Shown one piece after another: positions 1,757-64,000 of a stretch of DNA of 64,000 nt. The notes below the pieces were generated by a model. The model was not told where the DNA came from. It was given only the letters and a program-made list of their open reading frames with translations, and did not search any database. The position numbers and the translations under genes were made by a program. The DNA comes from Octopus sinensis. Taxonomy: Eukaryota. Positions within the stretch are counted from its first letter, which is position 1; every line of letters starts with the position of its first letter. The stretch lies in the NCBI RefSeq assembly GCF_006345805.1, contig NC_043010.1:25048001-25112000 (forward strand). Direction: 5' to 3'.

Positions 1757-3662
1757 ACCCAATGACTGGTGTAGCAGCATAATAGTCAACTGCTACAAAG
1801 GTAAAGGTGACGCCCTAGATACAAATAATTACAGAGGTATCAAGCTGTTGGATCAGGTAATGAAGGTTATGGTGAGGGTCATAGCCCAACTAATTAGAGA
1901 GAGAGTTTGTTTAGATGAGATGCAGTTTGGGTTTGTGCCAAGGAAAAGTACCACTGATGCCATATTCCTGGTAAGGCAGCTGCAGGAGAAATACCTAGCC
2001 AAAGATAAGCCCCTGTACCTGGCTTTCGTTGACATGGAGAAAGCCTTCGACAGGGTCCCCCGATCCCTTACCTGGTGGTCAATGAGGAAACTAGGGATAG
2101 ATGAATGGTTAGTGAGAGCTGTGCAAGCCATGTACAGGGACGCTGCTAGTAAGGTGAGGGTTGGCAACGAGTACAGTGAAGAATTCCGGGTAGGGGTATG
2201 GGTCCACCAAGGTTCAGTCCTCAGCCCCCTCCTATTTATCATAGTCCTCCAGGCAATAACAGAGGAATTCAAGACAGGATGCCCTGGGAGCTCCTCTACG
2301 CTGATGACCTTGCTCTAATTGCTGAGTCACTATCAGAACTGGAGGAGAAGTTTCAGGTGTGGAAGCAAGGATTAGAATCGAAGGGCCTTAGAGTCAATCT
2401 AGCTAAAACCAAAGTCCTAATAAGTAGGAAGGTAGACAAGTCACAAACGCCTTCAGGTAGATGGCCCTGCTCGATCTGTAGAAAAGGCGTAGGTAGAAAC
2501 TCTATAAGATGCACCAAGTGTAAGCTATGGACACATAAGAGGTGCAGTAACATCAAGGGAAGGCTAACTGCGAAGATAGTTTTTGTATGTGGCAGATGCT
2601 CAGGAGCAATATACACAGAAAATGCACAGAGACCAACTTCTGCCACATTCCAGGGAGAAAAACTAGAAATAGTTGATAGCTTCTGTTACCTAGGTGACCA
2701 AGTCAATAGCAGGGGCGGGTGTGCTGTAAGTGTAACTGCTAGAGTAAGAATAGCCTGGGCAAAGTTCAAAGAGCTCTTACCTCTGCTAGGGACAAAAGGC
2801 CTCTCGCTCAGAGTAAAAGGCATACTGTATGAACATCCATGCTACATGGCAGTGAAACATGGGCCGTGACTGCTGAGGATATGTGTAAGCTCGCAAGAAA
2901 TGAAGCCAGTATGCTCTGATGGATGTGTAATGTCAGTGTTCATACTCGACAGAGTGTAAGTACCTTGAGAGAAAAGCTGGACCTAAGAAGCATCAGTTGT
3001 GGTGTGCAAGAGAGACGTTTGCGCTGGTATGGTCATGTGGCGAGAATGGATGAAGATAGTTGTGTGAAAAGGTGCCACACCCTAGCGGTTGAGGGAACCT
3101 GTGGAAGAGGTAGTCCCAGGAAAACCTGGGACGTGGTGGTGAAGCACGACCTTCGAACTTTAGGTCTCACCGAAGAAATGACTAAAGACCGAGACCTTTG
3201 GAAGTATGCTGTGCGTAAGAAGACCCGGCCGGACAAGTGAGGCCATAACCTGTGGCCTCAGTCCACTTTATACATACCTTTCCTTCTTGGGACACAAAAT
3301 TCTACTTGTGAAGACTTGTTGAGGCAAGTGAAAAACAAAATCAAAATCGATCAACATCAATGGAAATCGTAGCTGTGATACCAGTGCCGATGGCACATAA
3401 GAGAACCACCCGAATGTGACCATTGCCAGCGCCGCCCTGACTGCCTCCATGCCAGTGGCATGTAAAAAGCACCATCCGACCGTGGCTGTTGCCGGCCATG
3501 CCTGACACGTAAAAAGCACCCACTACACTCATGGAGTGGTTGCCGTTAGAAACATTGCCAGATCAGACTGGGCCTGGTGCAGCCTTCTGGCTTCCCAGAC
3601 CCCAGTTGAACCGTCCAACCCATGCCAGCATGGAAAGCGGACGCTAAACGATGATGATGATG
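1757..3662 (+). mobile_element. 5'-truncated RTE-clade LINE (RT with PHD-like insertion, 3'UTR, (GAT)n tail)
   Basis: DMEKAFDRVP, HQGSVLSPLLF, LLYADDL; WPCSICRKGVGRNSIRCTKCKLWTHKRC; frameshifts and stops; ends AAACGATGATGATGATG. Confidence 0.92.
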
Positions 3663-8400: not shown

Positions 8401-9295
8401 GATGAATTTGACACAGACCAGAAGGGTAGCTTGGTTATGAATTGTGCTATCATCAACCTGGATAGAAAAATTTGTTTTTTGGAGAATTTCTACAACCTTC
8501 TCAACAAAATTAGACTGAATTGTACTCATAGTAGATGTAGCATCTTTTCCCAGAACATCATTTGCACAAGCTAACATAGTAGGCTTGACAAGTTTCTCAC
8601 CATAAATCTGAGGTGCTGCAACTGTGATAATAATTTCAGAGACCAAATAACTTGATTTGAATGTCTTTGCTTTTTCAGTATTTATCTTCTTTACAAAGTC
8701 GAGTAGTTTGTTTGGCTGTATTTTCTTTTTATTCTCAAAATATTTCCTACTTTTACCAAAAGATGATGGACGCCTTAATTTCTAGTGCTGTTCCAGCTTA
8801 ACTTTCTTCATGGAATGATTTGTCATGATGGCATCACACTCAAGACACATAGGTTTTGAGTCTACAGATACAAAACCAAACATGATAAAATCTTCTTTGT
8901 AGTTCCTCAGTTTTGCATTTTTAGCAGTTGATTCAGACATTATTATAACTGATCTTAAATAAAAATAATAAGTACTTTATTTCTATAAATTAAAAGTATA
9001 AAATTTATTATTAAACAATATTGTGTAGTGATCTATCAAAAATATCAAATTTATTATGAAACTGATGTGATTGTAAAATTTAAATTATGTAATTGTTGAT
9101 TGCAATATATTATTGATTATATATTATACATTATTCTTCTTATTATTATTCTGTCTTCATACAAATTATTATTAACTAATAGTGTCTTTATTATCAAACA
9201 ATATTGTGTAGATCTGAAATGGTTTCAATTTTTTTATGGCTACAAATTCTGTGGGGACCACCGGTGGGTCCCAGGGACCATGTTGGGAGTCATTG
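5463..9295 (-). mobile_element. hAT (Buster/Charlie-like) DNA transposon with decayed transposase (~8940 to 5719), interrupted by an RTE LINE
   Basis: TIRs CAGTGGTTCCTAAC / CAATGACTCCCAAC (revcomp). Exact 8-bp TSD ATCTAATG at 5455-5462 and 9296-9303. FSIQVDDST, IASDGAAAMTG, LLLHTEVNWLSKG motifs. Confidence 0.92.
5779..7350 (+). mobile_element. 5'-truncated RTE-clade LINE nested in the hAT transposase C-terminus
   Basis: ELLYADDLAL, LYDACVRTAMLHGSETW, RPRKTW; (GAT)n tail. The hAT frame RLRL resumes as ...IKIDYDILC on the other side. Confidence 0.9.
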
Positions 9296-12419: not shown

Positions 12420-15160
12420 ATATCATCATATCATCCTTGTTTAACATCTATCTTCCATGCATGGGTAGGACAGTTGTTAGGAGCTGGCCGGGTAGAAAAC
12501 TACCCTATGCTACTGTGACGGTTATGGCTGGATGCCTTTCCTAACACCAACCATTCTGCAGGGTGTACTTAGTGCTATTTACATGGCACTAGCACATGTG
12601 TAGTTAGCTTTGGCATAATTTTTACAGCTGGATCCCCTTCCAAATGTCAACTACTTTACAGTGTAGACTGGATGCTTTTTACGTGGCACCAGCACTGACA
12701 GGGTCTCCAAGTAACTCACAGACAAGGAATTATGAGAAGGAAGGGAACTTGTCTCAGAGGATGAAAGGTTAGAGTGTGACAGAAATAAAGAGGCAGAAAT
12801 AGGTGCCTTGCTATAGAGGAGATACATGGTTACTCAATGAGAGAGATAGAGTGATACAAAAATGAGTAGCAGAAATAGGTGTGCTGATGTAAAGGGGATA
12901 CTTGGTTAACTTGTCAGAGGAAAAACAAGAAACGGTGAGAGAGTGGTCAAGAATGAGGGCAGAAATAGGTGTGCTGATGTAAAGGGTATACTTGGTTACC
13001 TTGTCAGAGGAAAAACAAGAGAAGGTGAGAGAGTGATCAAGAATGAGGGCAGAAATAGGTGTGCTGCTGTAGAGGAGATACATGACTACCCAGCCAGAGG
13101 GAGCAAGGGGAAGAGAGAGGGAGTAAGAAACAGCAAAAGTGTAAGAGAGAGCAGGAGAGAGATGGTAAAGGGCCAGGGTATACTCACAAATAACAAGGAT
13201 CAGAACATAGATATAATAGTAGAGTAAGGAAAAAAGAGGTACGAAGATTGTAATATTTGCAGTCAGGTATTGCCAAGGAGGTACAAGTTGGGAGTAGGGA
13301 TTGCAGTAACTAGTGAAAACCTCAATAGAATAATAGGGCGCAGGGTGGGGAAAGCAGCGATACAGTGAGCAGGGCAGGAAAGAGGATTGGAAAACAATCA
13401 TAGTTTATGAAGAGGAAGAGGAGGATGTAGTTTGGTTTCTTGGAGTAGGGTGTGTGGAAAGTTTGTTGTTATATATGGGTGGGACATAACACTTAGTTTC
13501 ACTGACATGGGCTGGTCTTCTCTACAACCTCACATTGCCAAACATCTCATCCATCATTATTTCCTCTGTGAGCCCCAACATCCTAATATCACTCCTCACC
13601 ACTTCATCCCATGTCTTCTTGGGTCTCCATCTTCTACAGGTACAATCCATTTTCAGTGACAGGCATTTCTGTATATAGCTATCTTTACTCATACACATCA
13701 CATGTCCAAACCAATGCATTCTCCTCTCCTACATACCACATTTAATCCCTCTTATGCCTAACTTTTCTCTCAGCACAGTTATGCTTTGTCAGTCATGTAC
13801 ACTGATGTTGTAAATCCAATGTAGCTTACTACCTTCCTTCCTCTCCTGCCTACGCATGTCCTCCGTAATCAAAGCCCTTGTTTCACTACCATGCAATATA
13901 GCAGTTCTCACATAAGCATCATACAATTTACCTTTCTCTCTGAGAGAGAGTCTTTTTGTTGCCAACACAGGTAGTAGCTCTTCGAACTTCTCCATCCAAG
14001 TATTATTCTAGAAACAATACTTTCAAAGCATCTACCACCATTACTAATTTGATGACCTAAATAGCAGAAACTATCTGCTACCCCAAGAGAGCCTGCTGGG
14101 CATTTGAGAGAGTCTAAATACCCTCATGCTCTTAATGCTTATTGTTCCTGTGCATCTGCCACACATGAAAGTAATCTTATCTCGTAACCTACCTATGATT
14201 CCACTGCATCTATTATGCCTCCATACCTTACACAAATGGAATTACATCCCACTCCTTTCCTACATACTGAGCAGGGCCATTTACCTGACAGAAATAGTCT
14301 TATCCACTTTCTTGTTAACAACAGTTTTAGTCTTTGCCAAGTTAACTTTAAGAGGTGGAGGCACATTGCCTAGAGGTTAGAGCAGTCGAGGGGTCGCAGG
14401 TTCAAATCTCAGACCGGGCGATGTGTGTGTTTATGAGCAAAACCCCTAAGCTCCACATGGCTCTGGCAGAAGGTAATGGCGAACTTCTGCTGACTCTTTC
14501 GCCCCAACATTCTCTCACTCTTTCCTCCTGCGTCTTGTAGCTCACCTGCGACGGACCGGTGTCTCATCCAGGAGGGGAACCTATACGCCAAGGAAACAGG
14601 GAAACTGGCCCTTATGAGCCAGTCATGGCTTGAGAAGGAACAACTTTAAGGCCATTTGATTCCAGGTTTTGCTTCGAAACCTGGAACTTCTCCAATTCTG
14701 CTTCAGATTCTGCAATAAGAGCAAGATCATCAGCACATAGCATTTCCCATGGGCATCCAGTTTTGAATTCCTCTGTTATGGCCTGGAGAATTATGATGAA
14801 CAAGAATAGACTAAGAACTAATCCCTGGTTAACTCCAACTTGTACACTAAATTCATCACTGTATTCAAGGTTGACTCTCACTTTACTGACAGCATCACTG
14901 TACATGGCTTGTATGGCTCTAACAAATCACTCCTCTACTCCCAGCTTCCTTAAAGACCACCTGATAAGAGAGCAGGGAACCCTGTTGTAAGCTTTCTCGT
15001 CGACAGAGGTTAAGTACAATGGTTTATTTTTGACCAAATACTTTTCTCGTAACGGTCTCACTAGGAAGATGGTATCTGTAGTACTTCTCCCTGGAACAAA
15101 ACCAAACTGCATCTCATCTGGTTTAATTCTATCCCTAATCAGTTGGGATATAACTCTCAT
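12420..15160 (-). mobile_element. Decayed RTE-clade LINE with long 3'UTR containing ~90-bp tandem repeats
   Basis: EMLCADDLAL, QFGFVPGRSTTD, RPKKTW on the minus strand; repeats at 12860-13090. Confidence 0.85.
14353..14641 (+). mobile_element. tRNA-headed SINE inserted in the RTE RT
   Basis: Head with GGTTCAAATC B-box. 9-bp TSD AACTTTAAG at 14344-14352 and 14642-14650. Confidence 0.8.
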
Positions 15161-15382
15161 ATGTGTGTGTGTAATGAAAGAATTTGATGTTTGGAATATA
15201 GCTTATTTCAAAATTATTATTTAAAATTATGATAAAGGATTTCAATTTAAGTTATGTCTATTAAAATAAGCATTTGTGTATAATGAAAGCAAATACTTTA
15301 TAAAAACTAAATGTGTGAAATAATTCTTGGTTTAATTTTGTAGTTCATTTGTGTGAAATGATTTTTGGATTTCATTTTGCAG

Positions 15383-31860: not shown

Positions 31861-31964
31861 GTTATTGTTATGGGTATTAAGGGTATTAGTTATATGAATT
31901 ATTATTGTTGTTGTTGTTGCTATTGCTGTTGTTGTTGTTCTTGATGGTGATGATGCAGCAAGCT

Positions 31965-32175
31965 GGCAGAATCATTAGCATGCAAGGCAAAATTCCTAGT
32001 GGCATTTCATCTATCTTTACATTCTGAATTCAAATTCTGCTGAGGTTGACTTTGCCATTCATCCTTTTGGTGGTGGTGGGGGTTTCAATAAAACAAATAC
32101 CAGTTGAGGACTGGAGTCAAGGTAATTGACTTATCCACTCTCCAGAATTACTGGCCTTGTGCCAAAATCTGAAAT
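31965..32175 (+). mobile_element. Old SINE of the 'GGCGGCGAGCTGGCAGAA' family with tail B
   Basis: Head, TTTGCC(T/A)TTCATCCTTT core, GGCCTTGTGCC tail. Related internally deleted copy at 33983-34150. Confidence 0.7.
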
Positions 32176-32854
32176 TATTATTACAAGTTTGGTTTTTGCT
32201 TTGTATTTATACAAGCTGACTCTAAGTTTCTCCCAGAGATGAGGTCTCTGGGAGAAGTTGGTATTATGACTAGGGTACCATATTTAAGGTATGAGAGTGT
32301 CTGTCGAAACATAAGAGAATTAGAAGTTTGTTTTAAAAGTAATGTGACATAAGATGATAATGTGACCTTAAGATAGCAGTAAGAGGTGTTTGCTCATCAT
32401 CATCATCAATATCATCATAATCTAACGTCTGTTGTCTATGATGGCGTGGGTTGGATGGTTTCACTAGGGCTGGAAGGCTGCAGCTGATTCCAGTCTGATT
32501 TGTCATGGTTTTCTATGGCTGGATGCTCTTCCTAACGCCAACCACTCTAAGAGTGTAATGGGTGCTTTTATGTGCCACTTGTGTGACACCAGTATCTGCT
32601 GTGACTAATTTTGTTCTGCTTGATGGGTCTTCTTCTCAAACACAATATAATGTCAAAGGTTTTGGTCATTGCCTCCATGAGGCCCAACACTCAAAAGGAA
32701 CTCAGCCACTTTGCCTCCCTGAGGCCCAATGTTCGAAAGGAACTCAACCACTTTTATGTGCATTTAAAAGTACTTTTGACAATATCAAGAGATTAAAATG
32801 TTTTTGGGAATACAATATTTTTTATAGGATATGGGCAGTTCCCATGAGTGCTAT

Positions 32855-33950: not shown

Positions 33951-34364
33951 GACAGTTATCATTGAGATTATTATTATTATTTAAGGCAGCAAGCTGGCAG
34001 AATCATTAGCACATTGGGTGAAATGCTTAGCAGTATTTTGCCTGTCATCCTTTCAGGGTCAATTAAATAAGTACCAGTTACACACTGGGGTGAGGTAATC
34101 AATCCCTTCCCACAAATTTCAGGCATTGTGCCTACAGTAGAAAGGTTTATTATTATTCATATACACTCAACAGATTAGATTGTTGGAAAAGAAAAGTTTC
34201 TAACAAGTAACCTTAGATGCCAAAAACCCTCCTAAGTATCCCAGCTGTCCCTAATAACACTGTTTTCTAGAGCTGTACTAAATTGGGTTTTATGCCTATT
34301 TCCTCTAGCCATCTGTTCAAATCTTTAGGGATAGTTCCTAATGCACCTATAAATACACGATATA

Positions 34365-44841: not shown

Positions 44842-45300
44842 TAATCGACTGGTCTCCTCCCCCAAAATTTTGGGCTTTGTGCCTAAAGTAGAAAAGAACA
44901 TCTTTCTCTACTCCAGGGACAAGGCCCGAAATTTTGGGGGAGGGGGTAAGTCGATTGGTTCGACCCTAGTACGCAACTGGTACTTAATTTATCGACCTCG
45001 AAAGGATGAAAGGCAAAGTCGACCTTGGCGGAATTTGAACTCAGAACGTAGCGGCAGACGAAATACCTATTTGTTTACTACCCACAAGTGGCTAAACACA
45101 GAGGGGACAAACAAGGACAGACAAATGGATTAAGCCGAGTACATCGACCCCAATGCATAACTGGTACTTAATTTATTGACCCCGAAAGGATGAAAGGCAA
45201 AGTCGACCTTGGCGGAATTTGAACACAGAACGTAACGAAAGACGAAATATGGCTACGCATTTTGCCCGGCGTGCTAACGTTTCTGCCAGATCGCCGCCTT
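44842..45300 (-). mobile_element. Compound SINE: head + tail-A unit + tail-B unit, abutting an inverted tail-B fragment
   Basis: Read on the minus strand: head 45300-45250; junction ...AAACAAATAG|GTATTTCGTCTGCCG at ~45068; tail B ...GGCCTTGTCCCTGGAGTAGAGAAAGA. Confidence 0.85.
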
Positions 45301-45344
45301 CTGTTTACTTAACATTATACGATAAAATGCGTCGAGCATGCTTT

Positions 45345-45530
45345 ACGTTAGCATGCTTTACGTTCTGAGTTCAAATTCTGCCGTGGTCGACTTTGACTTT
45401 CATCCTTTTGGGATCGATTAAATAATTGCCAGTTACGCACTGTGATAGATGTAATCGACTTAATCCCTTTGTCTGTCCTTGTTTGTCCCCTTTATGTTTA
45501 GCCCCTTGTGGGCAATAAAGAAGTAAGAAA
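45345..45530 (+). mobile_element. Headless tail-A SINE unit
   Basis: GAGTTCAAATTC B-box, CTTTCATCCTTT core, tail TATGTTTAGCCCCTTGTGGGCAATAAAGAAG. Confidence 0.8.
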
Positions 45531-45995
45531 CATAAACCCACAGGTCAGCAATACTCGGGCACTGGACGACTGGGAGAGAAATGCCTGCCATCGCCTAATT
45601 CATACACCCTCTATGTTTCAACATTTATCTTAACACATCCTTCCACAAATGCAGGGTTCAAAATTCACATAAATAATATAATAACATAAAAGATTTTTGT
45701 ACTCACCCAGATGTGGCAAAAAAATTATATTAAAACTGACAAGCAAAAAGTTCTGGCAAATTCTTGGCGCATAAAATAAATCCATAAATGTGTAATACAA
45801 AGTATATATGCTAAATAAGCTTCCAGAATCCAGTTGAACAGAAGAGAGAAAAAAAAGAAACCGAGTGAATGAATTAGCTCTGCTTATAAAGGTTTGCTAA
45901 GGTCTAGCCAATTTGTTAGTTTGCCTATTAACACCTGGCTTCCCCCATTTTCACAATGGACTTCTTCCTGATTTTACTTAACATTCTTTTCTACT

Positions 45996-46060
45996 GAGGC
46001 GGCGAGCTGGCAGAACCGTTAGCACGCCGGGCGAAATGCATAGCCGTATTTCGTCTGTCG
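45996..46060 (+). mobile_element. SINE tRNA-like head (5' half of the Tx1 target)
   Basis: GAGGCGGCGAGCTGGCAGAACCGTTAGCACGCCGGGCGAAATGCATAGCCGTATTTCGTCTGTCG. Confidence 0.9.
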
Positions 46061-49000
46061 CACATGTGTTCGTGGTAAAAATTGCTGTTTCTTGGTGTTA
46101 ATATTGTTAATAACTGCTGTTTCTAATAACTGTTGTTTCTTGTTAAACTGTTGAATAACTTAACTGTTGGAGTTTTCATTTGAAAACTCTTAGTGCTTGT
46201 AGTAGCACGCGTTGTTCATTCCCTCTTTGGGGGAAAAAATGTCATCTAGCAAGGAGCCTACCGTTGGAGCAGAAATATTTGTTTCTCCTGTTGAGAGGAG
46301 GAAGTATATGTCCGGCGAGGAGCCAACTACAGACAGGGAAATAAGGGTTTCCCCCGCTACAAGAAGGAATAGCAGAATAGATAATATATTTGATTTTTTT
46401 GGAGATGTGTCTGAAAGCTCGTCAGAACTTTCACCAGAAGAGTTTCCGACTTTGCCAGAGAACAAGGGCATTGTGTCGAAAAGAATGATTGATGTACCTA
46501 GCATCCAGACAGAACCAAAAAATGGGGGAAAAAAAGTTTTGCGTTGGCAGCTGCGGGTGAAACCCGGCTGCTTTCGACGAATAAGAGCGACTTTATGAAA
46601 TACAGCCAAATGATGAAAATAACTGACAACGTTGTGAAAATTGAACCTCCAGAAAAGTTACTACAAGAAGAAAAACAAAAAAACAATAATTTTCAAAACA
46701 TATTGTTTACAAAAAAGAAAAATTGAAAGAATGTCAGAAGAGAAAATAAAAAAGTGCTTATGGGGCGATGTAGTTTATCTGAGAAGAGGCAAGAAATTCA
46801 GAACGGTGGAAGTAAGGTTCACCAATAAAGAAATAGCACAAAAGAACTCAGTAGAAACGCTGAAAACGAACGACGTGGAGCTCATTCCCACCTCTATGGG
46901 GATGAGAACGTCCAGATTAAAACTTACAAGGGTTCCACCAGAAGTGGGAGAGAAATGCCTGCCATTGCCTAATGGTTGTTGGCGGCAGTCCTAATCAAAG
47001 AGGAAGAGAAAATTACTCTCTTCCAGGCTACCGAAAACGCACATTGGGATGGTAAAACAATTAATCTCCTCATTCAAGCGGACCCTAAAATAATTCAAGC
47101 AATTCCCGAGACAATTGAGGTAGGGGAGGAGAACCTCGTGGTGTTTGTTGAAGGCCGAAAACCTCGATGTTTTTTATGTGGTCAATTAGGCCACATTCGA
47201 AGGAACTGCAAGGAAAATGAGGAAGAGGAGAAAAAAGACAAAGAGAAAGAAGAAAAAGATGAGAAAAAAAACAAACAAAAGGAAAATACAACCAGCAACT
47301 CAACCGAGAGTGGTGACTACTACAGAACAATGACCAAAAAAGACTGCCAGAAGAGAAAAAGAAGAAAAAGGTATAATAGCCGTATACACTAAAGATACTG
47401 AGCTAATGAGAGACATTCAACAGATAAAGACTGTAAAAAAATAGATAACCTCTCAGAGGAATTTATCAATTACGACGTATATGAAGTCTCAAATAAGACT
47501 CATAGAATTTTACAAAACAAATACAGAAAGACTATCTTCATTGAGATTAGATTTTAACAAGTCGATATTTCATGGATTGCCAGCCCCGATCCCGCGAGAA
47601 AAGGAAAGGGTGGAGACTCCCCCTCCACCTGATAATTCTGTGTCAGTGGTGAGACGGGATTTTGACAAATCTATTTCCCAAGACCGTCCACTTCCGACCC
47701 TGGATCAAAAAAAGGTTGAGGGTCCCCCTCCTCCGGACAATCCTGATTAAACAAGTAAGTCATGTCTATTCACATTGGTTGTATAAATGTTCGTGGCCTG
47801 ATGTCAAGCTGGAAGCAAGGACACTTTCTAAATGACATCAGGTCGAGAAATTTGGATGTAATTGTTGCAACGGAAACCCGGGTGAAGGGGCCAAGAGATC
47901 TGCTGCCCCTCCTGAACAGCTATGAGAAATACGTTTCTCCGAGTCGGGTGGGGGTGGGGTGTTGGTCCTACTAAAAAGAAACCGGGTAGCCGAGAAAAAG
48001 TTGGTTTTTTCTGACCCAGAAGGCAGGCTGGTCGTTCTCGACCTGACATTCAGTTGTGGAAAGACAATCAGGCTGGTCGCTATTTACGCACCAAACATTA
48101 TTGGCCCGCAAACTGAATATTTTCCTGACCTGGGAAAGCTCCTAGCCACTTCGCATTCACTAGTACTGTTAGGAGACTTTAAACAATATGTGCAGCACAC
48201 ACAGATTGTGTTGGCTCAAGCTCGAACATGAACAGAAAATGTATCCCAGGCTTTCGTGATCTGCTAAGTCAGTTTCAGCTAGCAGATCCACAGTGGACGT
48301 GGTCAAATAGTGACAGATCTACCAGAACATATTTAGATAGGATTTTAATTAGAGAAAAAGATAAGTCCATATTTGAGTGTCCACAGTTTTTTCTAGTCAG
48401 CTAGTGACCACAAGATAGTTACCTGTAAACTGATGGTAGATAAGTTGCATGGATAGGGATCTGGCTACTGGAAATTCAATACGTCCCTTTTGGCGATTGA
48501 GGAGTACAGAAAGCGGATCAAGATGTTAATACAGAGGGCATTAATAGGTACCATCATTAATAACAAATGGTGGTACGCCCTAAAAAGAGCCATCAAATAT
48601 GAGTCTATTAGGTTTAGCAAAAGTTTAGCTAAGAAGGGACGTAGAATAGGAGATGGTCTAGTTAAGGAACTAGAAGAAGCCTGGAGGACTGGTAATGCAG
48701 ACCAAGCGAGGGTGAAAAGACTGGAGTTAAACCAGCATCTTGAAGCCCAACACATGGGAAGTATTGGCAGAGCTAAGTTACATGCAATGGGAAGTGAAGG
48801 AATCAAGGCCGCTGGATGGGCCCGAGTGGTGGAAGCTCGGCAAGGAAATAGTTCCTATATTCGGTCTTTGACGAATCAGAATGGTGTCTTGGTAAACAAA
48901 CCCGAGAAAATGTGTGCGGTCTTTCGGGAGTACTTCGCCCAGCTGTTCGGGGATGACGGCGGTCCTGGTGGTGGGAGAGCCCTCGAGGACTTTCTTGCCG

Positions 49001-51319
49001 GGCTGCCGTGCCTCTCGGGGTCGGATGCGGAGTCTTGCGAAGGGCCAATCACGCCTGAGGAGGTGATGGAGGCTTTGACTGATTACAATCAGCGGGTAAG
49101 TCGCCGGGACTTGATGGTCTTCCGTACGGGCTGTATGCCAGACTTGTTCGGAAAACTACTGACTGACGTGTACGCGAACTGGAAATAGAATGGGTTTATC
49201 CCCAGATTTTTGTGTGCCGGGGAGTAGTCAGACGTTGGTCAGAAAGGACCCGGGCAAGGGGGACGTTCTAGAAAATTTCAGGCCCATCACTCTGGTAAAC
49301 ACAGAAGTGAAGATTTTGGCCAAGGTTCTAGCAAAAAGGTTGGCGCGTGTCGCGAATGGTATAGTCGGGGAGGCACAGACATGTGCCATCCCCGGCAGAA
49401 CCATTCAGGATACCCTCCATCTTATTCACTATACCATAGAGAGGGTTGGTAATAAATCTGGCAAAGGTGGGGCATTGGTGCATTTGGACCAGTCTAAAGC
49501 TTTTGATAGGGTTGACCATCGATACCTAGCGACTGTGCTTGCGCAGTTTGGCCTGGGTCTTGGCTTCCTTAAGTGGTTTATCGCTTTGAACCACAACATT
49601 GACTTGATAGTTCAGGTGAACGGTTTCCTTTCGAAGCCGTTCTGCATTAGACGCTCGGTTCGTCAAGGATGTCCGTTTTCACCACTTTTGTATGTGATGG
49701 CTCTCAAGCCATTACTGCGAAGGTTGAGTGGTATCCCGAGAGAACCAGGACTAGAGGAGTTTATTACGGCTTTCGCAGATGATATCACTATCAGCGTAAC
49801 CACAGTAGCACGCCTGCGTGAAGTAGGTAAGACTACTGAGGTTTACGAAGATGTAGCAGCAGCAAAGATTAACCGGGAAAAGTCGGTCGGCTAGCAGCTC
49901 GGCACCTGGGTTGGCAAGTCGATGCCTTCAGATAGCGTTGTTGGGCGCTGGACGGAGGGACCGGTTAAGTTGCTGGGAGTCTGGTTTGGACCAGGCCTCC
50001 AGATAGAGAAGAACTGGACGGAGGTATTGAGCAGGGTGGCTGCAGTAGTCAAGACTTGGTCTTGGCGGTGGCTATCCCTGAAAGGGAGGGCAGAGGTGGC
50101 CAATGTGTTTATTGCATCGGTCATTACCTACCTCCTGACTGTTTTGCCCTGTCCGGATTCGTGGTTGATCAGGTTGGAGAGACAGCTCTTTCGCTTTTTG
50201 TGGAAGGGCAGGTCGCCACTTGTGAAACACTCTGTCTGCTGTCAAAAGCCTTTAAAGGGAGGTTTAGGGATGCCTTGGTTAATGATGCGCAGACATGATG
50301 CGTTGAGGTTGAGGCACCTCTGGATTCTCCTGGATAGTGAATGGGTGTGGTCTCTGCTGGCCAGACAAATGTTCCCTGAGTTCAAGAGTTTTTGCGAACA
50401 GGAAGCCTGGTGTTCTCATAGACCGAGGTCGAGTGAGTGGCGTTCCGGCGCTCGGGCAATGCCAGCGGTGGGGGTTCCACACGGATTTTATATAGTGGGT
50501 TGGTAGAGTTTGAATGCGACGATGGCCTGGGGTCGACTCTAGGTCTCGGATTTATTCAACTGGACAGCCTGTTTCATCGTACATTCGGGTTGAGAACGTT
50601 GGACAACTTCCAAAAGTCCTTAACCTGGCAATGCTACAGAGGTGCCTTGCCCGTTTGGGATAAGCTCGCAAGACATGGTAAACGTCAGTCGCAGACCTGT
50701 CCAAGATGTGGGGGGGGGGGCAGGGAAACCGTCCCTCACGCTATTGTTCAGTGTCCGGAGATAACTGAAATGTGGGATTATGCTGAACACCTGCTGTCCG
50801 GCGAAGGAAGAGTACAGCTGTCGACTGAGTCAATTATAAAAATTGATCCACCGGGAGTTCTAATGAACGAAGGTAAGAATTGTTTTCTCACGGTTGTAGC
50901 AATAGCAAAAGAGGCAGTATGGAAGACTAGGATAAAAGGAATTAAGACAGGCAACTTTATCTCTGGTCACAATTTACGATCTTTTTTTCTTTTCATTTGA
51001 AAAGGAAACTGCGGCTGGAGAAGAGGTGTCTGTCGGAGTGTACGTTCCAAAAGAGATGGAAGCCTGTTGCACGAGTGTTGTGCGTGCAGAGAACCGTGTG
51101 AATAGACGGGAAAAAAAGGTATCAGCAGTAGATCGGGGCTTGTGGGGTCGGAGCGTAACCTGATCATCGCTTCATTTGTATTGTGTATTCCATTCGATTT
51201 TTTATGTATTGTATTTTATTTTTAAAGTCACATTTATGTAAAATCATATCGCTTCACTGATCCGATCAGTTGTACTGTCCATATCTATGTTTGGCCCCCG
51301 GTGGGCAATAAAGAAATTT
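46061..51319 (+). mobile_element. Apparently full-length Tx1/L1-clade LINE: ORF1 (~46212-47392, CCHC knuckle) and ORF2 (47762-~51101, APE + RT + CCHC), disrupted by frameshifts and stops
   Basis: CFLCGQLGHIRRNC; CINVRGL, ATETR, IYAPN, LLGDF; LDQSKAFDRVDH, QGCPFSPLLY, FADDI; CPRC...ETVPH...C. 15-bp TSD 46046-46060 / 51320-51334 (14/15 identical). Confidence 0.93.
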
Positions 51320-51856
51320 GTATTTCGTCTGCCGTTACATTCACAGTTCAAATTCCGCCGAGGTTGACTTTGCCTTTCATCCTTTCGAGGTCGATAAATC
51401 AAGTATCAGTTACGCACTGGCGTTGATATAATCGACCTAATCCGTTTGCCTGTCCTTGTTTAGCCACTTGTGGGTAGTAAAGAAACAGGTATTTCGTCTG
51501 CCGCTACATTCTGAGTTCAAATTCAGCCGAGGTCGACTTTACCTTTCATCCTTTCGGAGTCGATTAAACAAGTACCACTTACGCACTGGGGTCGATGCAA
51601 TCGACTTAATCCGTTTGTCTGTCCTGTTTTGTCCTCTCTGTGTTTAACCCCTTGTGGGTAGTAAACAAGTAGGTATTTCGTCTGCCCCTACGTTCTGAGT
51701 TCAAATTCCGCCGAGGTCGACTTTACCTTTCATCCTTTTGGGGGTCGATTAAGTAAATACCAGTTACGCACTGGGTTGATATAATCGACTCAATCCGTTT
51801 GTCTGTCCTTATTTGTCCCCTCTGTGTTTAGCCCCTTGTGGGTAGTAAACAAATAG
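51320..51856 (+). repeat. Tandem array of three headless tail-A SINE units (169, 184, 184 bp)
   Basis: Units start at 51320, 51489 and 51673, each with GTATTTCGTCTGCC. Confidence 0.92.
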
Positions 51857-52653: not shown

Positions 52654-52914
52654 ATACATACATACACACATGACGCAGCTTGCGTATGTGTTTATATGTG
52701 TGTGTGTGTTTGTATACGTGTGTGCGTAGAGTTAATATAAACATCTGCGTGTACATATGCGTATATATTGATGTGTGTCTGACTTTTTTCAACTTTTTTC
52801 TATTGTTTTCAAACTGTCTTCACCCTTTTTCTTCTTTCGTTGTTTTCCTGTTGTCTCTCCTTTTTCCTGCTTCGCCACCACCCACCTTTACCAGTTTGCC
52901 ACCACCTCTCATCA

Positions 52915-55756
52915 TGCCTGACTTGCACTCGTTCGTCCAACACCTTCAATCCCTCCTCAGCCGCTACCTCGCGTTCTTCCCCCCACAATGTTCCGCACCT
53001 GCTATAAAACTTTCCCGCTTGCTTTTTAAGAAAACCCGCCACTCTAGTCATCTTTCCTTTCTTAGCCGGTGCCTCCGCCATCATGTCACACCCCGCGGTT
53101 TCCTCTTGAAGTTCCACGCTACCCCCTATTCCTCCCCCTTCATCGAACCCACCCTCGCTCGGACCTCCCGCTCCCTCCTCCGCGCCACCATCCGCTCCAC
53201 CCGCCCCCTCCTTGACTCCCTCGACCATCAACTTCCCCAGGCCTACCTCCTTCTCTCCGCCCTCTGCCCTCCACTCTTCACCCAACCTATCCTCCGCTTC
53301 ATTCTTAATCTCAACCACCAACTCTACAACCACCTCACACACACAAAAAACAAAAAACTCCACCTCCTCCTCAACCCCTCACCCCCTTCCCCATCCTCCC
53401 CCACTGTTCCCCCCCTCCTTCGCACCTACCCCACCCTTCCACGGACCCCCCCCCACCGTGACCTTCCTACGCCTAACCCATCTTCACCCAACCACCCCTA
53501 CCCTCCCCTTCACACCCCTGCACCCCCTCCGCCTGCCCCTAGTCCTCCCACCACCCCGCTTCCTCGCGCTGTTGTCACTATACCCCCCCCCCTCCCCCTC
53601 TCCGCCGCTGAGCGTTCCCTCCTCAGTAGAGGTCTCCGCTTCACGCCACTCACGCGCCACTGTGATGAGTTCGAGACTCGGGCGGACGTCAACCTGTTCC
53701 TGCGCCGCCTCAAACTTCGCGCATACTACCACGCGTCCCCGCAGCGTCAAAACAATCAGGATTGCCTTTTGGAGCTGGGGCGTCGTCCATCCATCTGGAC
53801 GCCGCCCCCAGGCCTTTTCAGTAGCCTAGATTCGTTTGTACATGACTGCAACGCTTTGGTCCACCGTTTCAACTTTGAACCAAGACCCCGCCGAGCCAAC
53901 CTCACTCGGGCCGAATCCATTGCCCTTCGCCACCTCCGCCGTCGTGATGACATTGTCATCAAACCGGCGGACAAAGGCGGGGCAGTGGTAGTGTGGCGCG
54001 CGGACCTATACAGGGAGGAAGCGCTCAACCAGCTTCAAAATCCACTCTTCTATCGCCTCCTCCCCTCCGATCCCACCTCCTCCTACCAACAACGAGTGTC
54101 CTCCACCATCCACGACCTCATCTCCTCCTCCGCTCTCCCCCTCACCGCCACCAACCTCATCGTCCGCACACCCCGCACCTCCACCATCTACTTCCTTCCC
54201 AAGATCCATAAACCCTCTAATCCTGGCCGTCCCATAGTCTCTGCCTGTAATTGCCCCACTGAACTCATCTCCCTATACCTCGACCGCATCCTGTCCCCCT
54301 TAGTCGCAGCCCTCCCATCCCACATACACGACACCAACCACGCCCTCCGTCTCTTCAATTCCTTTTCCTTCCCTTCCAGCCCCTCACACCTCCTCTTCAC
54401 TTTAGATGTAAAATCCCTGTACACAGTGATTCCCCACAATGACGGTCTCCTAGCCCTCCAACACTTCCTCGACCGTCGTCCCGACCCCACCCCCAGCACC
54501 CCCACCTTCTCCGTTTGGCCGAGCTCGTCCTCACCCTCAATTGCTTCACGTTCGCCGGGGAAACGTACCAACAGGTGTCCGGGGTCGCGATGGGAACTAG
54601 GATGGGCCCCAATTTCGCCAGTCTCTTCTTGGCTACATTGAGGCCCAAGTGTTCTCCCAGTTCTCTGGGCCGACCCCCGAACTATACGGTCGCTATATCG
54701 ACGACTGCGTAGGTGCCACCTCCCTTTCCCGTGAACTTCTCTGCCAATTCATCTCTTTCCTTTCCAACTTTCACCCCTCCCTTCAATTCACCTCCACCAT
54801 CTCCAACACCTCTGTCAACTTCCTTGACATCTCTCTCCGCATCGATCACCCCTCCAGATCTCTCACCACCACCGCCTTTTTTAAACCTACGGATTCCCAC
54901 CTCTATCTCAACTTCTCTTCCTCCCACCCCTTCCACACCAAACGAGCCATCCCCTACTCCCAGTTCCTCCGCCTCCGACGTTTGTGCAGCCGCGACCAGG
55001 ATTTCGAGACCCAATCTCAATACCTGGCCCGCATGTTCAGACTCCGAGGTTACCCACCCATACTCCTCTCTGATGCCCTCACCCGCGCCCGTCGCATCGA
55101 CCGCACTACCGCCCTGTCTCCTCCCCCCGCCCACCCCCAACCGCACCCCCTTCCCCCTCCTTTTCCACCCCTCTACCCTACCCCTTCGTCGCAAGATACT
55201 ACGTGCCTTCCGTCGCCTCCAGCTTGATCCCACCACCCGCCCCATTTTCCCTAACCTACCCCTGTCCTCTTTCAAACGAGCCCGCAATCTGCGTGACCTC
55301 CTGGTCCACAGCACCCTCTCTCCTTCCCCCTCAGCCCCACACGGATCATTCCCTTGCTCTAGATCCCGCTGCAACACTTGCCCCTTCATCACCAACACCA
55401 CCGCTGTCACCGGCTCCAACCTGCACACTGTACGCATTAGGCACTCTTTTACGTGCACCTCGTCTGGCCTTATTTACTGCATTAAATGCAACCTATGCGG
55501 GATGCTGTATGTAGGACAGACGGGACGCCGGTTGTCCGACCGTTTCACTGAGCACTTAAGGGACGTTCGCCTACACTCTCTTTCTCCCGTCGCACGCCAC
55601 TTCCGTTCGGCCGGCCATTCCCTAGATGACATCTCAGTGTTTGGTCTCGCCCCCCACCAAGGTCGCCCACTTTCCAGGCTCCACTTGGAGCAACGCTACA
55701 TCTTCACCCTACAAACTACCACCCCACACGGACTTAACACAGCCCCCTCCTCTTGA
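52915..55756 (+). mobile_element. Penelope-like element, Neptune-type ORF (RT + Zn-finger linker + C-terminal GIY-YIG), ~3 frameshifts
   Basis: IVIKPADKGGAVVVW, YFLPKIHK...GRPIVS, TLDVKSLYTVIP, GVAMGTRMGPNFA, YGRYIDDC, CSRSRCNTC, GLIYCIKCNLCGMLYVGQTGRRLSDRFTEH; stop TGA at 55754-55756. Confidence 0.93.
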
Positions 55757-55789: not shown

Positions 55790-58560
55790 ACCACCCACAC
55801 ACACACACCCACCTGCCTCCCACACGCACACACCCACCCACCTACCTCCCACACACACCCAACCACCTACCTCCCACACGCCTGTTCACACACACACATA
55901 CGCAGACCCATTTACGTACATACATTCACACATTTAATCACACACACTTACAGACATACTAGCACACACTAACATACAAACCAACATGCACATACACACA
56001 CACATACATACATACGCACACACATACATACTTACACACACACACACACACAGACATACATACACACATACACACACACATACATACGCACATACATACA
56101 CACACACTCACACACACACACACCGCACGTACATACTTCACACACACACATGCAAACATACATGTAGGCACATACATACATACATGCCCACACATGCACA
56201 CCCTTACACTGAATGCACACACACATACACCTTTTTGCATCCAGGCAGCCCCCCCTCTTTTCTGCTTTCCGGTTTTGGCTGATGGATCCTCGGTTCCCGC
56301 GTAGCGGGGCGTTCGAGGGCCTTTGCGCTCGCGCGCCTTGGCGCGCGCTGGGGGCTTGGTCGGCCCCTTGGGCTTGCGTTGTACTGCTTGTGCGTTGTGT
56401 GCGTGAGCGCGCTTTGTGCGTGTGGGCTTGCTTCGGATGTGCGCGTACGTATGTATGCATACATACCCACACACTCGCATGCATCCCTACCCACATACAT
56501 ACACGCACACCTACTCACACACACACATACACACACATACCTGCACACACACACACATACATACATACACATACATACCTACTTCAGACATACACACACA
56601 CAGACATACACCCATACACTCACACTCACACGCATACACACACACACATACACACGCACACGTACACATACACACACACACACACACCTACATACATACA
56701 TTACACTTGTATACACACACACTTACATTCATACACACACACACCTACACAGCCATACCCTCACTCAGACACACACATCTACCTACACACACACACAAAC
56801 ACACACGGACACACACCCATACATACATACATCTACACACACACGCCTACACACATACATACACACATACATAAACACACACACATACACATATACACAC
56901 ATACGCACACACACATATACTTATACACATGCACACACACACATACATACATACACCCATATACATACATACACACATACCCACATACTCCTATACGCAC
57001 ATACATACACAAAGACATACACACTTACACACTCACACAAACATACACACACACATACTTACACACACACTCACCTGCACGCGCACACACATGCATGACA
57101 AACACCCATACACTCACACTCACATACGCACACACCAACATAAACACGCACACGCACACACACACCTACACTCCCACACACATACACACGCACCTACATA
57201 CACACACGCACGCATACACACGCACACACACATACATTACACACGTACACACACACCCACATACACATGCATACACACACACACAAACATGCACGGACAC
57301 ACCCAGACATACACACATACACCTATATACACACGCCCACACACCTACATACACACACATATACACACGCCCACACACCTACATACACACACATACATAC
57401 ACACACATACACGGACACACCCACACATACTTACATACATACACCTATACACACACGCCTACACACCTACATACACACACATGCATACACACACACACAC
57501 ATGTACGCACATACACACACATATACGCACATACATATATACCCACACACATGCACACACACACACACATACGCACATGCATGCATGCATGCACACGCGC
57601 ACACCTACACGCATACACACACACACGCACGTACACATACATACATACACACACGCATACATACACCCATACACATACATGCATCTGACACACACATACA
57701 TACACACTCACACATACATACACACACACACTCACTCACACACCTGTATGTACGCGCACACACATGCACATACACACACTTCCCCACACCCACACGTACA
57801 TACATACACACTCACACACATACACACACAACACACGGACATACATCTATGCACACACATACATACACACATACTCACATACATTCATCGCACACACTGC
57901 CACCCAGACATACACACAGACACACTCACACATCCACACACATACATACGTACGCGCATACTCGCAGGCACGCGCACATACGCACTTACGCCGGCTCGCG
58001 CTGCATACGCGTCGCATACACCTCGCCCTTGGACCTGACGAGACCTCCCGCCCGTTCCTGGGACCGTCGCGTGTCGTTGGGTTTTCCCACGCCTGTCTCC
58101 GCGGTACCACTCTTCCATCTTCCCCTCAGCTGGAGTCCTTTTTCCTTAACCCCCCCCCTTTTTTTCGTTACACACACGCGCACACATATACACACCTTGC
58201 CTATATATATACATCACTCTTACACACATTCAATCTACTCGCCATTAATACCACCACGACACTGGACACACACACACACTACTACTCAACACACGCTGGC
58301 ACGCTACATACGCCCCCACCCCTTCCCCTCCCTCCCTTCCTCCTTCCTTCTTTTTCTTACTACTGACCTCCCTTCCTCCTTCCTTCTTTTTCTTAGTACT
58401 GACCTCGTCTGCTAGCTGACCACTAGTCTCGCCCTACCTCACACGCCTACACACAGACGCACACACTAACACACACATATATTTTTTTGTTTTTTCATCT
58501 CGCCTCACACACACACACACACACACGCACATGCACACACTCACACATACACACACATCT
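55790..58560. repeat. Long complex (CA/CATA)n microsatellite field with two GC-rich islands
   Basis: Directly visible; produces spurious HT-rich ORFs. Confidence 0.9.
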
Positions 58561-62971: not shown

Positions 62972-64000
62972 TGAAAGGAAGCAACAGAAAGTAACAACTA
63001 CACTCTTACCCGCGCGTAGAGCGGGTCACCTTCAACTAGTATATATATATATATTCATTTTTTTTTTATGTAGTATGAATGGTGAAAAGAGTACAACAGA
63101 ACAAGGAAGGAATGGAATGCAATTGGGTCTTACCTAGCTGGAGATGAACTTGGATCGCCTTTAGCCAACTCGCTCGTGTCGTGTCTTCGTCGTGTCTGAG
63201 TCAACTGCTCGATGCCGCACGTGCGTTCTGCCTGTCACTTCCGCTTCCGCCGGCACATGCGCCCTGCAAACCCTGCAAGCCCCACTTCCGCTCTCCCCAT
63301 CCGTCACACTCCCTCACCATCACAACACACGCCCCCCTGATCTATAGATCACTGAACCGGCTTCCTCACTCGCTCCCGCACCTGAAACTGGTTTCATAAT
63401 CAGCCAACCAGGGAGGAGGGTGCCGCTCCCTCTGTGGTCGCAGTGCGACCCTATGACTTGTTTCTGGTGTGTTGCTGCCGACCTCGTCATCCTGTCTGTT
63501 GTTTTCGTCTTGCCCACTGCTGCTTGTCCCATCCTCTGGGGCATGGACAATCCTCCATATGTCCAAAACGTGGCGTGGCATACCATCGACCGAGATGTTA
63601 TTCTTTGAATTTACGGAGGTTATTGTCCCCTTTCCCCATTGCGATGTATACCGTGCGTTTGGGGGTTTTACCCAGACTTCCTCCCCGACCTGCACGAAGG
63701 CGTGCTCTTCCTCTGCCCCGGGTCGCATTGACGTAGTACACGGATGCCTCCACTCGTACCTGAATATTGCCCTGTGTGGCACCGACTCCTCAGCCTGTCC
63801 TGATCTGGGCGATATATTGTACCAAAACACGGCCTCGACTGGTGAAATGTGACCCCTCTCTGCCATGGCCTTGATGGTACGATGATGCCTTTCCACCACC
63901 CCGTTTCCACTTAGCCGGTATGCCGCCCTGAAGAAGCGGTTGACCTTCCACTCATCAAGCATTTCTCTCAGCACATCCGAGCGAAACGCAGTGCCGTTGT
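62972..64000 (-). mobile_element. Gypsy/Ty3 LTR retrotransposon 3' end: integrase, PPT and 3' LTR (~62972-63327)
   Basis: NGTAFRS...SGNGVVERHHRTIK...YNISP; stop at 63366; G-rich PPT (TCAGGGGGGCG) before TGTTGTGA; LTR bounded by TG...CA. Confidence 0.85.

What the first reader, a model, noticed from the sequence alone, without database searches (positions are those of the whole stretch)
45996..51334. Tx1-clade LINE inserted at a defined site in a SINE head, and sharing its 3' tail with that SINE family
Seen: the LINE splits a tRNA-like SINE head with a 15-bp TSD (GTATTTCGTCTGTCG 46046-46060; GTATTTCGTCTGCCG 51320-51334). The LINE 3' end TATGTTTGGCCCCCGGTGGGCAATAAAGAA (51286-51315) matches the tail-A SINE end TATGTTTAGCCCCTTGTGGGCAATAAAGAA (45493-45522) at 27/30 nt, and both keep a GCCC/GGGC stem-loop. 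Known: Tx1-clade APE endonucleases are often sequence-specific (small-RNA genes, repeats, other elements), and SINEs use LINE machinery through shared 3' tails. Inference: this LINE targets a very abundant SINE and also mobilises a tail-swapped derivative of it, so partner and target are the same family. I cannot tell whether this pair has been described.
Basis: partly seen in the sequence, partly recalled or inferred. Interest (0 to 1): 0.88.

Follow-up and report, generated by a model that had tools for sequence, protein, structure and literature searches.

The report
Octopod LINE splitting its partner SINE
A dead L1/Tx1-type retrotransposon in an octopod genome sits inside a short repeat (SINE) at the same nucleotide where three other copies of that SINE are joined tail-to-body, and it shares its 3' end with that SINE; this suggests, but one window cannot prove, that the LINE family both copies the SINE and aims at it.

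Summary
A roughly 5.26-kb degenerate LINE (46061-51319) interrupts a SINE. SINE positions 1-63 lie upstream and positions 50-232 downstream, which gives a 15-bp target-site duplication (14/15 identical). The LINE has an ORF1 CCHC knuckle and an ORF2 with APE, RT and zf-RVT domains, and its RT is closest to human L1 ORF2p. Its 3' end matches SINE tails (27/30 best), including a 4-bp hairpin whose second base pair is flipped only in this LINE and the window's SINEs.

New here: three more junctions in the window place a complete SINE 3' tail directly before the same GTATTTCG. Four of five SINE copies of that site are occupied, against none of 30 other RTATTTC sites. This supports preferential, orientation-specific insertion at one SINE position, which builds head-(body-tail)n arrays.

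Specificity of the LINE itself rests on one copy. No other copy of this family could be retrieved. Six 3' ends of related LINEs (Argonauta, Octopus sinensis, metagenome and Logan contigs) lie in (ATT)n, AT-rich DNA or another repeat, not in a SINE. Tx1-clade membership and the tRNA origin of the head were not verified. The closest precedent is Tx1-Mar with SINEU, which share a transposon target. Verdict: partly supported, a new variant of a known kind.

The parts
45998..46060 (+). SINE head, positions 1-63, upstream of the LINE. Contains a long inverted repeat (5' arm 46028-46039, loop 46040-46045, 3' arm 46046-46057).
   Evidence: BLAST against the full SINE copy, 90% identity. RNA fold gives a cloverleaf-like shape with a 12-bp arm, z -2.3.
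46046..46060 (+). Left copy of the 15-bp target-site duplication, GTATTTCGTCTGTCG.
46061..51319 (+). Degenerate, apparently full-length L1/Tx1-type LINE. 5'UTR 46061-46238. ORF1 remnants 46239-47392, with zf-CCHC at 47165-47215. ORF2 remnants 47762 to about 51101: APE 47762 to about 48440, RT 49262-49885, zf-RVT 50614-50775. 3'UTR about 51102-51319.
   Evidence: ORFs and three-frame translation. Pfam. PDB: human L1 ORF2p at 4e-27 against R2 at 6e-14. Relatives are 54-64% identical in amino acids.
51286..51319 (+). LINE 3' recognition-type tail: TATGTTTG, hairpin GCCC-CCGGT-GGGC (51294-51306), then AATAAAGAAATTT.
   Evidence: 27/30 match to the SINE tail at 45493-45522. The same motif ends related LINEs in Argonauta, O. 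sinensis and a JGI contig. Hairpin pair counts.
51320..51334 (+). Right copy of the target-site duplication, GTATTTCGTCTGCCG.
51320..51488 (+). SINE unit U1, positions 50-232. This is the remainder of the SINE the LINE interrupted. It carries a 15-nt deletion in the tail module.
51489..51672 (+). SINE unit U2, positions 50-232. It starts at GTATTTCG directly after the complete tail of U1.
51673..51856 (+). SINE unit U3, positions 50-232. It starts at GTATTTCG directly after the tail of U2. Its own tail abuts unrelated DNA (GGGATC...).
45067..45298 (-). Full-length SINE copy, positions 1-232, with an A-type tail. Used as the reference for position numbering.
44901..45066 (-). SINE unit starting at position 50 (GTATTTCG) directly after the tail of the copy above. 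It carries the alternative B-type 3' module.
45358..45527 (+). 5'-truncated or rearranged SINE copy with the tail most similar to the LINE (GGGCAATAAAGAA). Its 3' end abuts unrelated DNA (AAACATAAACCC).

Best explanation
**What is there.** The window comes from an octopod genome. It holds a dead copy of an L1/Tx1-type LINE and many copies of a SINE whose last 30-40 nt (up to about 65 nt in a gapped multiple alignment) derive from that LINE lineage's 3' end. That 3' end is a 4-bp hairpin with a CTTGT-type loop followed by AAUAAAGAAAU.

**Proposed mechanism.**
1. ORF2p binds this 3' element on its own RNA and, in trans, on SINE RNA.
2. Its APE endonuclease preferentially nicks the bottom strand of SINE DNA between positions 49 and 50. 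This is the junction between the loop and the 3' arm of a long inverted repeat in the SINE head.
3. The enzyme primes reverse transcription at that nick. The top strand is cut 15 bp downstream, which makes the 15-bp duplication.
4. A full-length LINE therefore ends up as head(1-63) | LINE | 50-232.
5. When a SINE RNA is the template, the cDNA becomes homologous to the target's own head once it passes position 50. The 5' end is then joined by homology and no second head is left, giving head-(body-tail)n arrays.

**Shown.** The insertion with its duplication; the shared tail and hairpin; four tail|GTATTTCG junctions in one orientation.

**Inferred.** That the endonuclease, or base-pairing of read-through RNA to the site, causes the preference; trans-mobilisation of the SINE; and the homology-mediated 5' joining.
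For: - **Insertion.** SINE positions 1-63 and 50-232 flank the LINE, with a 14/15 duplication.
- **Repeated use of one site.** The complete 3' ends of three SINE units abut the same nucleotide in the same relative orientation, at two separate loci.
- **Occupancy.** Four of five distinct SINE position-50 sites in the window are occupied. None of 30 other RTATTTC sites is.
- **No orphan units.** No unit starting at position 50 is preceded by non-repeat DNA (0 of 4).
- **Array is not one unit duplicated.** Array units are 85-89% identical to each other and 79-87% identical to unlinked copies. U1 shares subfamily variants with copies at the other locus, not with U2 and U3.
- **Tail similarity.** z is about 14 for the best copy.
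- **Shared hairpin flip.** The second stem pair is C-G in this LINE and all window SINEs, and G-C in 12 of the 13 Argonauta, O. sinensis and JGI LINE and Argonauta SINE tails (the 13th is unpaired there).
- **Parallel co-variation.** In Argonauta the LINE and SINE tails also match each other: GGCCCTTGTGGCTAATA[A/G]AGAAATCTAT.
- **Duplication length.** A 14-bp duplication flanks a related SINE in O. sinensis, so a 14-15-bp stagger is typical of the group.
- **Precedent.** Tx1-type LINEs and their SINE partners share a transposon target (PMC4494074).
Against: - Only one LINE copy is available, and the window's junctions may not all be independent events.
- No same-family copy could be retrieved.
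- Six 3' ends of related LINEs (54-64% amino-acid identity) lie in (ATT)n, AT-rich DNA or a satellite-like repeat.
- Two of six A-type tails in the window abut unrelated DNA.
- No SINE-in-SINE insertion with an internal head and a duplication was seen. That structure would be direct proof of retrotransposition into the site.
- Tandem SINE-derived arrays can arise by recombination (PMC10702118).
Confidence: 0.5

Rival explanations
1. Weak motif preference combined with SINE abundance. This LINE group nicks 5' of short T-rich or ATT-like motifs such as (ATT)n and RTATTT. The SINE is very abundant and happens to carry one good match. Hits at position 50 would then reflect the number of available sites, not recognition of the SINE.
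For: - Relatives end at (ATT)n (L002, L010) or at ATT-initial or AT-rich targets.
- Window B-tail SINEs are flanked by ATTATTATT.
- An O. sinensis B-tail SINE has the duplication ATATTTCACCACAA, which resembles GTATTTCGTC.
- Two of six A-type tails abut non-SINE DNA.
Against: - None of 30 non-SINE RTATTTC sites in the window is occupied, against four of five SINE sites.
- The nick position and orientation are identical in all four cases.
- The sample is small and the events are not fully independent.
Confidence: 0.2
2. Coincidence plus recombination. The LINE landed in a SINE by chance. The body-tail arrays arose by unequal crossing-over or tandem duplication, or were inherited from a multimeric master SINE that retrotransposes as a whole, as dimeric SINEs and SINE-derived satellites do.
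For: - SINE-derived tandem arrays are documented in squamates and attributed to unequal homologous recombination (PMC10702118).
- U2 and U3 are the most similar pair, at 89%.
- Tandem SINE arrays with other junction positions exist in Argonauta.
Against: - Every unit boundary coincides with the complete retrotransposition-competent 3' end of the SINE, and with the exact nucleotide where an unrelated LINE's 3' end is joined with a duplication. A chance hit on that nucleotide and strand has probability about 4e-5 per event (5 sites in 128,000 strand positions).
- U1 belongs to a different variant group from U2 and U3.
- The same junction occurs at a second locus with a different downstream tail module.
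Confidence: 0.15
3. RNA-level origin of the position-50 boundary. SINE RNA is cleaved in the loop of its long hairpin, as tRNA halves are. The 3' fragment (50-232) keeps the LINE-recognised tail. It is then reverse-transcribed either after a template jump from another RNA's 5' end, or at a re-used target site next to a resident tail.
For: - Position 49/50 is the junction between the loop and the 3' arm of a 12-bp hairpin in the predicted fold.
- Argonauta shows precise tail-to-position-1 tandem SINEs, consistent with re-use of a target next to a resident tail or with end-to-end template jumps.
Against: - It does not explain the LINE being flanked by SINE 1-63 and 50-232 with a 15-bp overlap, which is a DNA-level duplication.
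- No unit 50-232 is found at a non-SINE site in the window.
Confidence: 0.1

Closest known systems
Tx1-Mar LINEs and SINEU SINEs of crocodilians (Kojima 2015, PMC4494074)
   Same: A Tx1-type LINE group and the SINEs it is thought to mobilise share a preferred target inside another interspersed repeat. The shared target is used as the evidence for partnership.
   Different: In crocodilians the target is an unrelated Mariner DNA transposon, and SINEU has no recognisable LINE-derived tail. Here the target lies in the partner SINE's own head, the LINE and SINE tails are visibly homologous, and self-insertion would build tandem arrays. Here the LINE evidence is a single copy.
Tx1L/Tx1D of Xenopus and the microsatellite-targeting Tx1 families Kibi and Koshi (cited in PMC4494074)
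   Same: An APE-type LINE of the L1/Tx1 group with sequence-specific insertion. Relatives of the window's LINE end at (ATT)n, much as Kibi and Koshi end at (TC)n and (TTC)n.
   Different: The target here would be a SINE. Endonuclease specificity is untested. Clade membership by RT phylogeny is not established.
UnaL2/UnaSINE1 of eel, a stringent-type LINE-SINE partnership (Kajikawa and Okada 2002, cited in PMC4494074; from established knowledge)
   Same: A short conserved 3' stem-loop plus a terminal motif is shared by the LINE and the SINE, and is presumably the RNA element recognised by the RT.
   Different: UnaL2 belongs to the L2 clade and is not target-specific. No mobilisation assay exists for the present pair.
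R2 and its non-autonomous derivatives (SIDEs) in rDNA (PMC3414825)
   Same: An autonomous element and its non-autonomous partners use one defined site. Homology with the target and co-transcripts shape the 5' junction. Repeated use of one site is common.
   Different: R2 uses a restriction-like endonuclease and a single-copy-type host gene target. The present target is itself a mobile element that spreads the site.
SINE-derived satellites of squamates (PMC10702118)
   Same: Tandem arrays whose unit is a portion of a SINE.
   Different: In squamates the arrays are attributed to recombination and their boundaries are not tied to the SINE's 3' end. Here every unit ends at the intact 3' tail and starts at a LINE insertion site.

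Membership tests
Tx1 clade of non-LTR retrotransposons | RT-domain phylogeny places the element with Tx1L, Keno, Kibi and similar families (RTclass1-type classification). | not testable with these tools
   No named Tx1 or L1 reference set was reachable, and the database hits are unnamed. The nearest solved structure is human L1 ORF2p (4e-27) against R2 (6e-14). That places the element in the L1/Tx1 supergroup only. Octopus repeat annotations list L1-Tx1 and no other L1-like class among the LINEs they name (PMC13282606, PMC8967140), which makes Tx1 likely by elimination.
Tx1 clade of non-LTR retrotransposons | Architecture: an ORF1, and an ORF2 with an N-terminal APE endonuclease, RT, and a C-terminal Cys/His zinc-binding domain. 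| tested here: met
   zf-CCHC in ORF1, RVT_1 and zf-RVT. Exo_endo_phos after stitching frames. All reading frames are broken.
Sequence-specific non-LTR retrotransposon | A substantial fraction of independent copies sit at the same target sequence and position (more than 20% of flanks in PMC4494074). | tested here: inconclusive
   One LINE copy, at SINE position 49/50. Three SINE tails abut the same site. Four of five SINE sites are occupied against none of 30 other RTATTTC sites. No further copies of the family were obtainable. Relatives are not in SINEs.
Sequence-specific non-LTR retrotransposon | The element-encoded endonuclease cleaves the target at the insertion site. | not testable with these tools
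   This needs a biochemical assay.
LINE-SINE partnership through a shared 3' tail (stringent type) | The 3' end of the SINE is homologous to the 3' end of the LINE. | tested here: met
   27/30 for the best copy, and 25-32 identities over 29-40 aligned positions for the others, with z of 6-14. The alignment extends to about 65 nt. The second hairpin pair is flipped only in this LINE and the window's SINEs. Argonauta shows parallel LINE and SINE tail agreement.
LINE-SINE partnership through a shared 3' tail (stringent type) | The LINE protein mobilises the SINE RNA in trans. | not testable with these tools
   This needs a retrotransposition assay.
tRNA-derived SINE (SINE2) | The head is recognisably derived from a tRNA, with A and B boxes. 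| tested here: inconclusive
   A B-box-like GTTCAAATTCC and a cloverleaf-like fold with a long central arm are present (z -2.3). ARAGORN at default settings finds nothing, and relaxed thresholds give inconsistent calls. There is no Rfam tRNA match at E<=1.

The most novel reading that the evidence does not exclude
A LINE-SINE pair in which the SINE is both the LINE's passenger and its landing pad. The endonuclease, or RNA-to-target pairing, recognises a site in the SINE head, so every SINE insertion creates a new target. LINE and SINE copies then pile up at that nucleotide, and SINE-into-SINE events resolve by homology into head-(body-tail)n arrays. This would be a self-propagating safe-harbour strategy and a retrotransposition-driven route from SINE to tandem repeat, in genomes where SINEs are the main repeat class.
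Probability: 0.4. Interest if true: 0.7.

Novelty: new variant of a known kind. Interest (0 to 1): 0.5.

Why it matters
Target-specific LINEs are usually thought to survive by aiming at multicopy host genes, microsatellites or other transposons. A LINE that aims at its own SINE partner would show that a parasite of the LINE can also serve as its expanding safe harbour.

It would also give a concrete, testable mechanism for turning dispersed SINEs into tandem arrays. That bears on the origin of SINE-derived satellites and on the SINE-rich architecture of octopus genomes.

If the preference is real, the roughly 15-nt site and the small 3' hairpin are compact, assayable determinants of DNA targeting and RNA recognition for an L1/Tx1-type enzyme.

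Tried and rejected
- **Collection scans for more copies.** The SINE tail pattern and a 40-nt SINE body pattern that matches all six window copies gave zero hits in JGI metagenome contigs. The body pattern also gave zero hits in GTDB genomes and IMG/VR.
- **Protein searches.** Searches with the RT part and the C-terminal part of ORF2 found no same-family protein. The best hits were 54-64% identical, from Argonauta hians, Octopus sinensis, JGI, ENA and Logan.
- **Species identification.** A third protein search used the neighbouring intact Penelope-like ORF, hoping to identify the species and sample more of its genome. It gave only relatives of 62% identity or less from other animals.
- **Contig look-ups.** Contigs of relatives gave six informative 3' junctions, none in a SINE. 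P0122 is not on record. L011 and L006 stop before the 3' end.
- **Rejected: the LINE's true 3' end includes the downstream SINE units.** Relatives end at the same AATAAAGAAAT motif followed by unrelated DNA.
- **tRNA identity of the head.** Not supported by ARAGORN or Rfam.
- **Spurious Rfam hits.** miRNA-like hits at 44848-44948 come from two SINE tails abutting tail-to-tail.
- **Duplication flanking the whole SINE-LINE composite.** None convincing was found.
- **Literature.** No paper in the held library describes this pair or contains the SINE sequence.

Full report
**1. What is in the sequence**

A full SINE copy lies on the minus strand at 45298-45067 and serves as the reference for position numbering (232 nt).

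BLAST of this copy against the window places:
- positions 1-63 at 45998-46060;
- positions 50-232 at 51321-51488;
- two more units of positions 50-232 at 51490-51672 and 51674-51856;
- on the minus strand, a unit starting at position 50 at 45065-44947, directly after the reference copy.

All of these come, and the sequences are read.

The 5.26 kb between 46060 and 51320 is therefore an insertion into a SINE. It is flanked by a 15-bp duplication: GTATTTCGTCTGTCG on the left and GTATTTCGTCTGCCG on the right. The 15-mer occurs 5 times, against 0.06 expected by chance. Tandem Repeats Finder also reports the downstream array.

**2. The insert is a dead L1/Tx1-type LINE**

Pfam finds a CCHC knuckle in ORF1, RVT_1 (E 2.4e-26) and zf-RVT. 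After stitching frames it also finds an APE endonuclease domain (E 5.9e-10).

ORF1 is in three pieces. ORF2 changes frame at least six times and has several in-frame stops.

Among solved structures the RT is closest to human L1 ORF2p (4e-27), well ahead of R2 (6e-14).

Published octopus repeat annotations list L1-Tx1 as the L1-like class present (PMC13282606; PMC8967140). 'Tx1' is therefore likely, but I could not test it by phylogeny.

The best relatives are from Argonauta hians (58%), JGI contigs (62-64%) and Octopus sinensis (54% over the C-terminus). A SINE fragment in the O. sinensis locus is 84% identical to the window's SINE. The window is therefore octopod, with the species undetermined.

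**3. Shared tail**

The LINE end matches the tail of the SINE copy at 45358-45527 at 27/30. The score is 45 against a shuffle mean of 13.5 +/- 2.3. The other SINE tails match at 25-32 identities over 29-40 aligned positions. In a multiple alignment the similarity runs for about 65 nt.

All tails carry a 4-bp hairpin with a CTTGT-type loop, followed by AAUAAAGAA.

The same module ends related LINEs in Argonauta (L001, L010), O. sinensis (L005) and a JGI contig (L002). It also ends the Argonauta SINEs.

On 19 tails, 90.8% of cells pair. Shuffles give 79.9%, and slid partners give at most 53%. The second stem pair is C-G in the window's LINE and all five of its A-type SINE tails. It is G-C in 12 of the other 13 tails, and the remaining one is unpaired at that position.

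This is one evolutionary event and not repeated covariation. It does tie the window's SINE tails to this LINE lineage and not to the O. sinensis-type relative.

The SINE also exists with a second 3' module, tail B. Tail B weakly resembles the 3' end of a more distant LINE of the same group, at 22/25 (L004).

**4. Is the site special?**

Evidence for a preferred site:
- Six A-type 3' ends exist in the window: the LINE, U1, U2, U3, the minus-strand copy and the copy at 45527. Four abut GTATTTCG at SINE position 50, all in the same relative orientation. Two abut unrelated DNA.
- Of 36 RTATTTC sites in the window, five distinct ones are at SINE position 50. Four of those are occupied. None of the 30 others is.
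- No unit starting at position 50 is preceded by non-repeat DNA.
- Array units are 85-89% identical to each other and 79-87% identical to unlinked copies. U1 shares diagnostic variants with the copies at the other locus, not with U2 and U3. The array is therefore not a simple recent duplication of one unit.
- In the predicted fold the duplicated 15 nt contain the whole 3' arm of a 12-bp hairpin in the SINE head (its first 12 nt), and the nick lies at the loop/arm junction.

Taken together, these observations argue for a preferred, strand-specific integration site used by elements that carry this tail.

**5. Limits**

The LINE evidence is one copy. I could not obtain any other copy of this family:
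- pattern scans of the metagenome, prokaryote-genome and viral collections found no trace of the SINE;
- protein searches found only different families.

Six 3' ends of related LINEs lie elsewhere:
- two at (ATT)n (L002, L010);
- three in AT-rich DNA (two in L001, one in L007);
- one in a satellite-like repeat with an ATTGGAT duplication (L005).

B-tail SINEs in the window are associated with ATTATTATT. One in O. sinensis has a 14-bp duplication, ATATTTCACCACAA. The group as a whole therefore seems to prefer ATT-like or T-rich targets. Recognition of the SINE site could be an extension of that preference.

Tandem SINE arrays also occur in Argonauta, but with tail-to-position-1 junctions. SINE-derived satellites made by recombination are documented in squamates (PMC10702118). 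Recombination, a multimeric master SINE, or RNA-level processing therefore remain possible for the SINE-SINE junctions. None of them explains the LINE's duplication falling on the same nucleotide.

**6. Comparison with what is known**

The closest precedent is Kojima's Tx1-Mar and SINEU pair, in which a Tx1 group and its presumed SINE partners both prefer one Mariner family (PMC4494074). Tx1L with Tx1D, the microsatellite-specific Kibi and Koshi families, the stringent 3' stem-loop recognition of UnaL2 with UnaSINE1, and R2 with its SIDEs cover the remaining mechanistic elements.

What would be new is that the target lies in the partner SINE itself, with array formation as a consequence. I found no description of this in the held literature. 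Repbase and Dfam could not be consulted.

**7. Verdict**

Insertion into the SINE and tail sharing are solid. A preferred SINE site for tail-bearing elements is supported within this window. LINE-family specificity, Tx1 membership and the tRNA origin of the head are unproven.
- Best explanation: preferential insertion at SINE position 49/50 by the LINE machinery acting on both LINE and SINE RNAs, with confidence about 0.5.
- Novelty: a new variant of a known kind.
- Interest: 0.5.

Noticed in passing
L010 4900-5360 (Argonauta hians) and L001 10815-11320: In L010, three full-length copies of a short (~157 nt), clearly tRNA-like SINE stand in direct tandem with precise tail-to-position-1 junctions, and the first is preceded by (ATT)n. 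In L001, a SINE tail is followed directly by the next SINE's 5' end. Both carry the same LINE-type tail as the Argonauta LINE. Tandem piling-up of tail-bearing SINEs is therefore not confined to the window's species, although the junction position differs.
   Followed up: partly
window 44843-44956: Two B-tail SINE 3' ends abut tail-to-tail and form a 53-nt inverted repeat (81% complementary). This produces sub-threshold miRNA-like Rfam hits (mir-193, mir-186, mir-351), which are almost certainly spurious.
   Followed up: partly
window 45571-45599 vs 46945-46973: An isolated 29-nt stretch about 45 nt downstream of the tail-A SINE copy is 28/29 identical to a piece of the LINE's ORF1 region. Nothing around it matches the LINE. 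Its origin is unexplained.
   Followed up: partly
window 45304-45316 and 45973-45985: An exact 13-nt direct repeat, TTTACTTAACATT, lies a few bases outside the 5' ends of the two divergently oriented SINE copies. It brackets about 656 bp that contain the tail-A SINE copy. It could be the duplication of an older insertion, or chance.
   Followed up: no
window 31955-32190 and 33985-34155; L005 3237-3360: SINE copies with the alternative B-type 3' module. One is flanked by ATTATTATT on both sides, and another is followed by ATTATTATTA. The O. sinensis copy has a clean 14-bp duplication, ATATTTCACCACAA. Tail B resembles the 3' end of a more distant LINE (L004, 22/25). This suggests a second LINE partner with an (ATT)n or T-rich target.
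   Followed up: partly
L005 10918-10927 (O. sinensis LINE 3'UTR): The related LINE's 3'UTR contains GTATTTCGTC, identical to the first 10 nt of the SINE target site. The window's LINE has TTTGTATTGTGTATTCC at the equivalent place. This may be chance, or a hint of RNA-to-target pairing.
   Followed up: no
window 52680-55756: A Penelope-like element with long intact reading frames (653 aa and 347 aa) lies just downstream of the SINE array. Database relatives are at most 62% identical and come from other animal phyla, so it may be a young, lineage-specific family.
   Followed up: partly
window 1848-2869, 6061-6681, 7688-8646(-), 14576-15175(-), 63366-63974(-), 55790-58560: The window is dense with transposable elements. 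It holds RTE-like RT fragments, a hAT-like transposase remnant, another RT remnant, an integrase fragment, and about 2.5 kb of CA-rich simple repeat. No host exon was recognised.
   Followed up: no
window 46073-46169: The LINE 5'UTR contains three to five copies of a ~16-20-nt motif (TAATAACTGCTGTTTCT-like). This may be a promoter or regulatory repeat.
   Followed up: no
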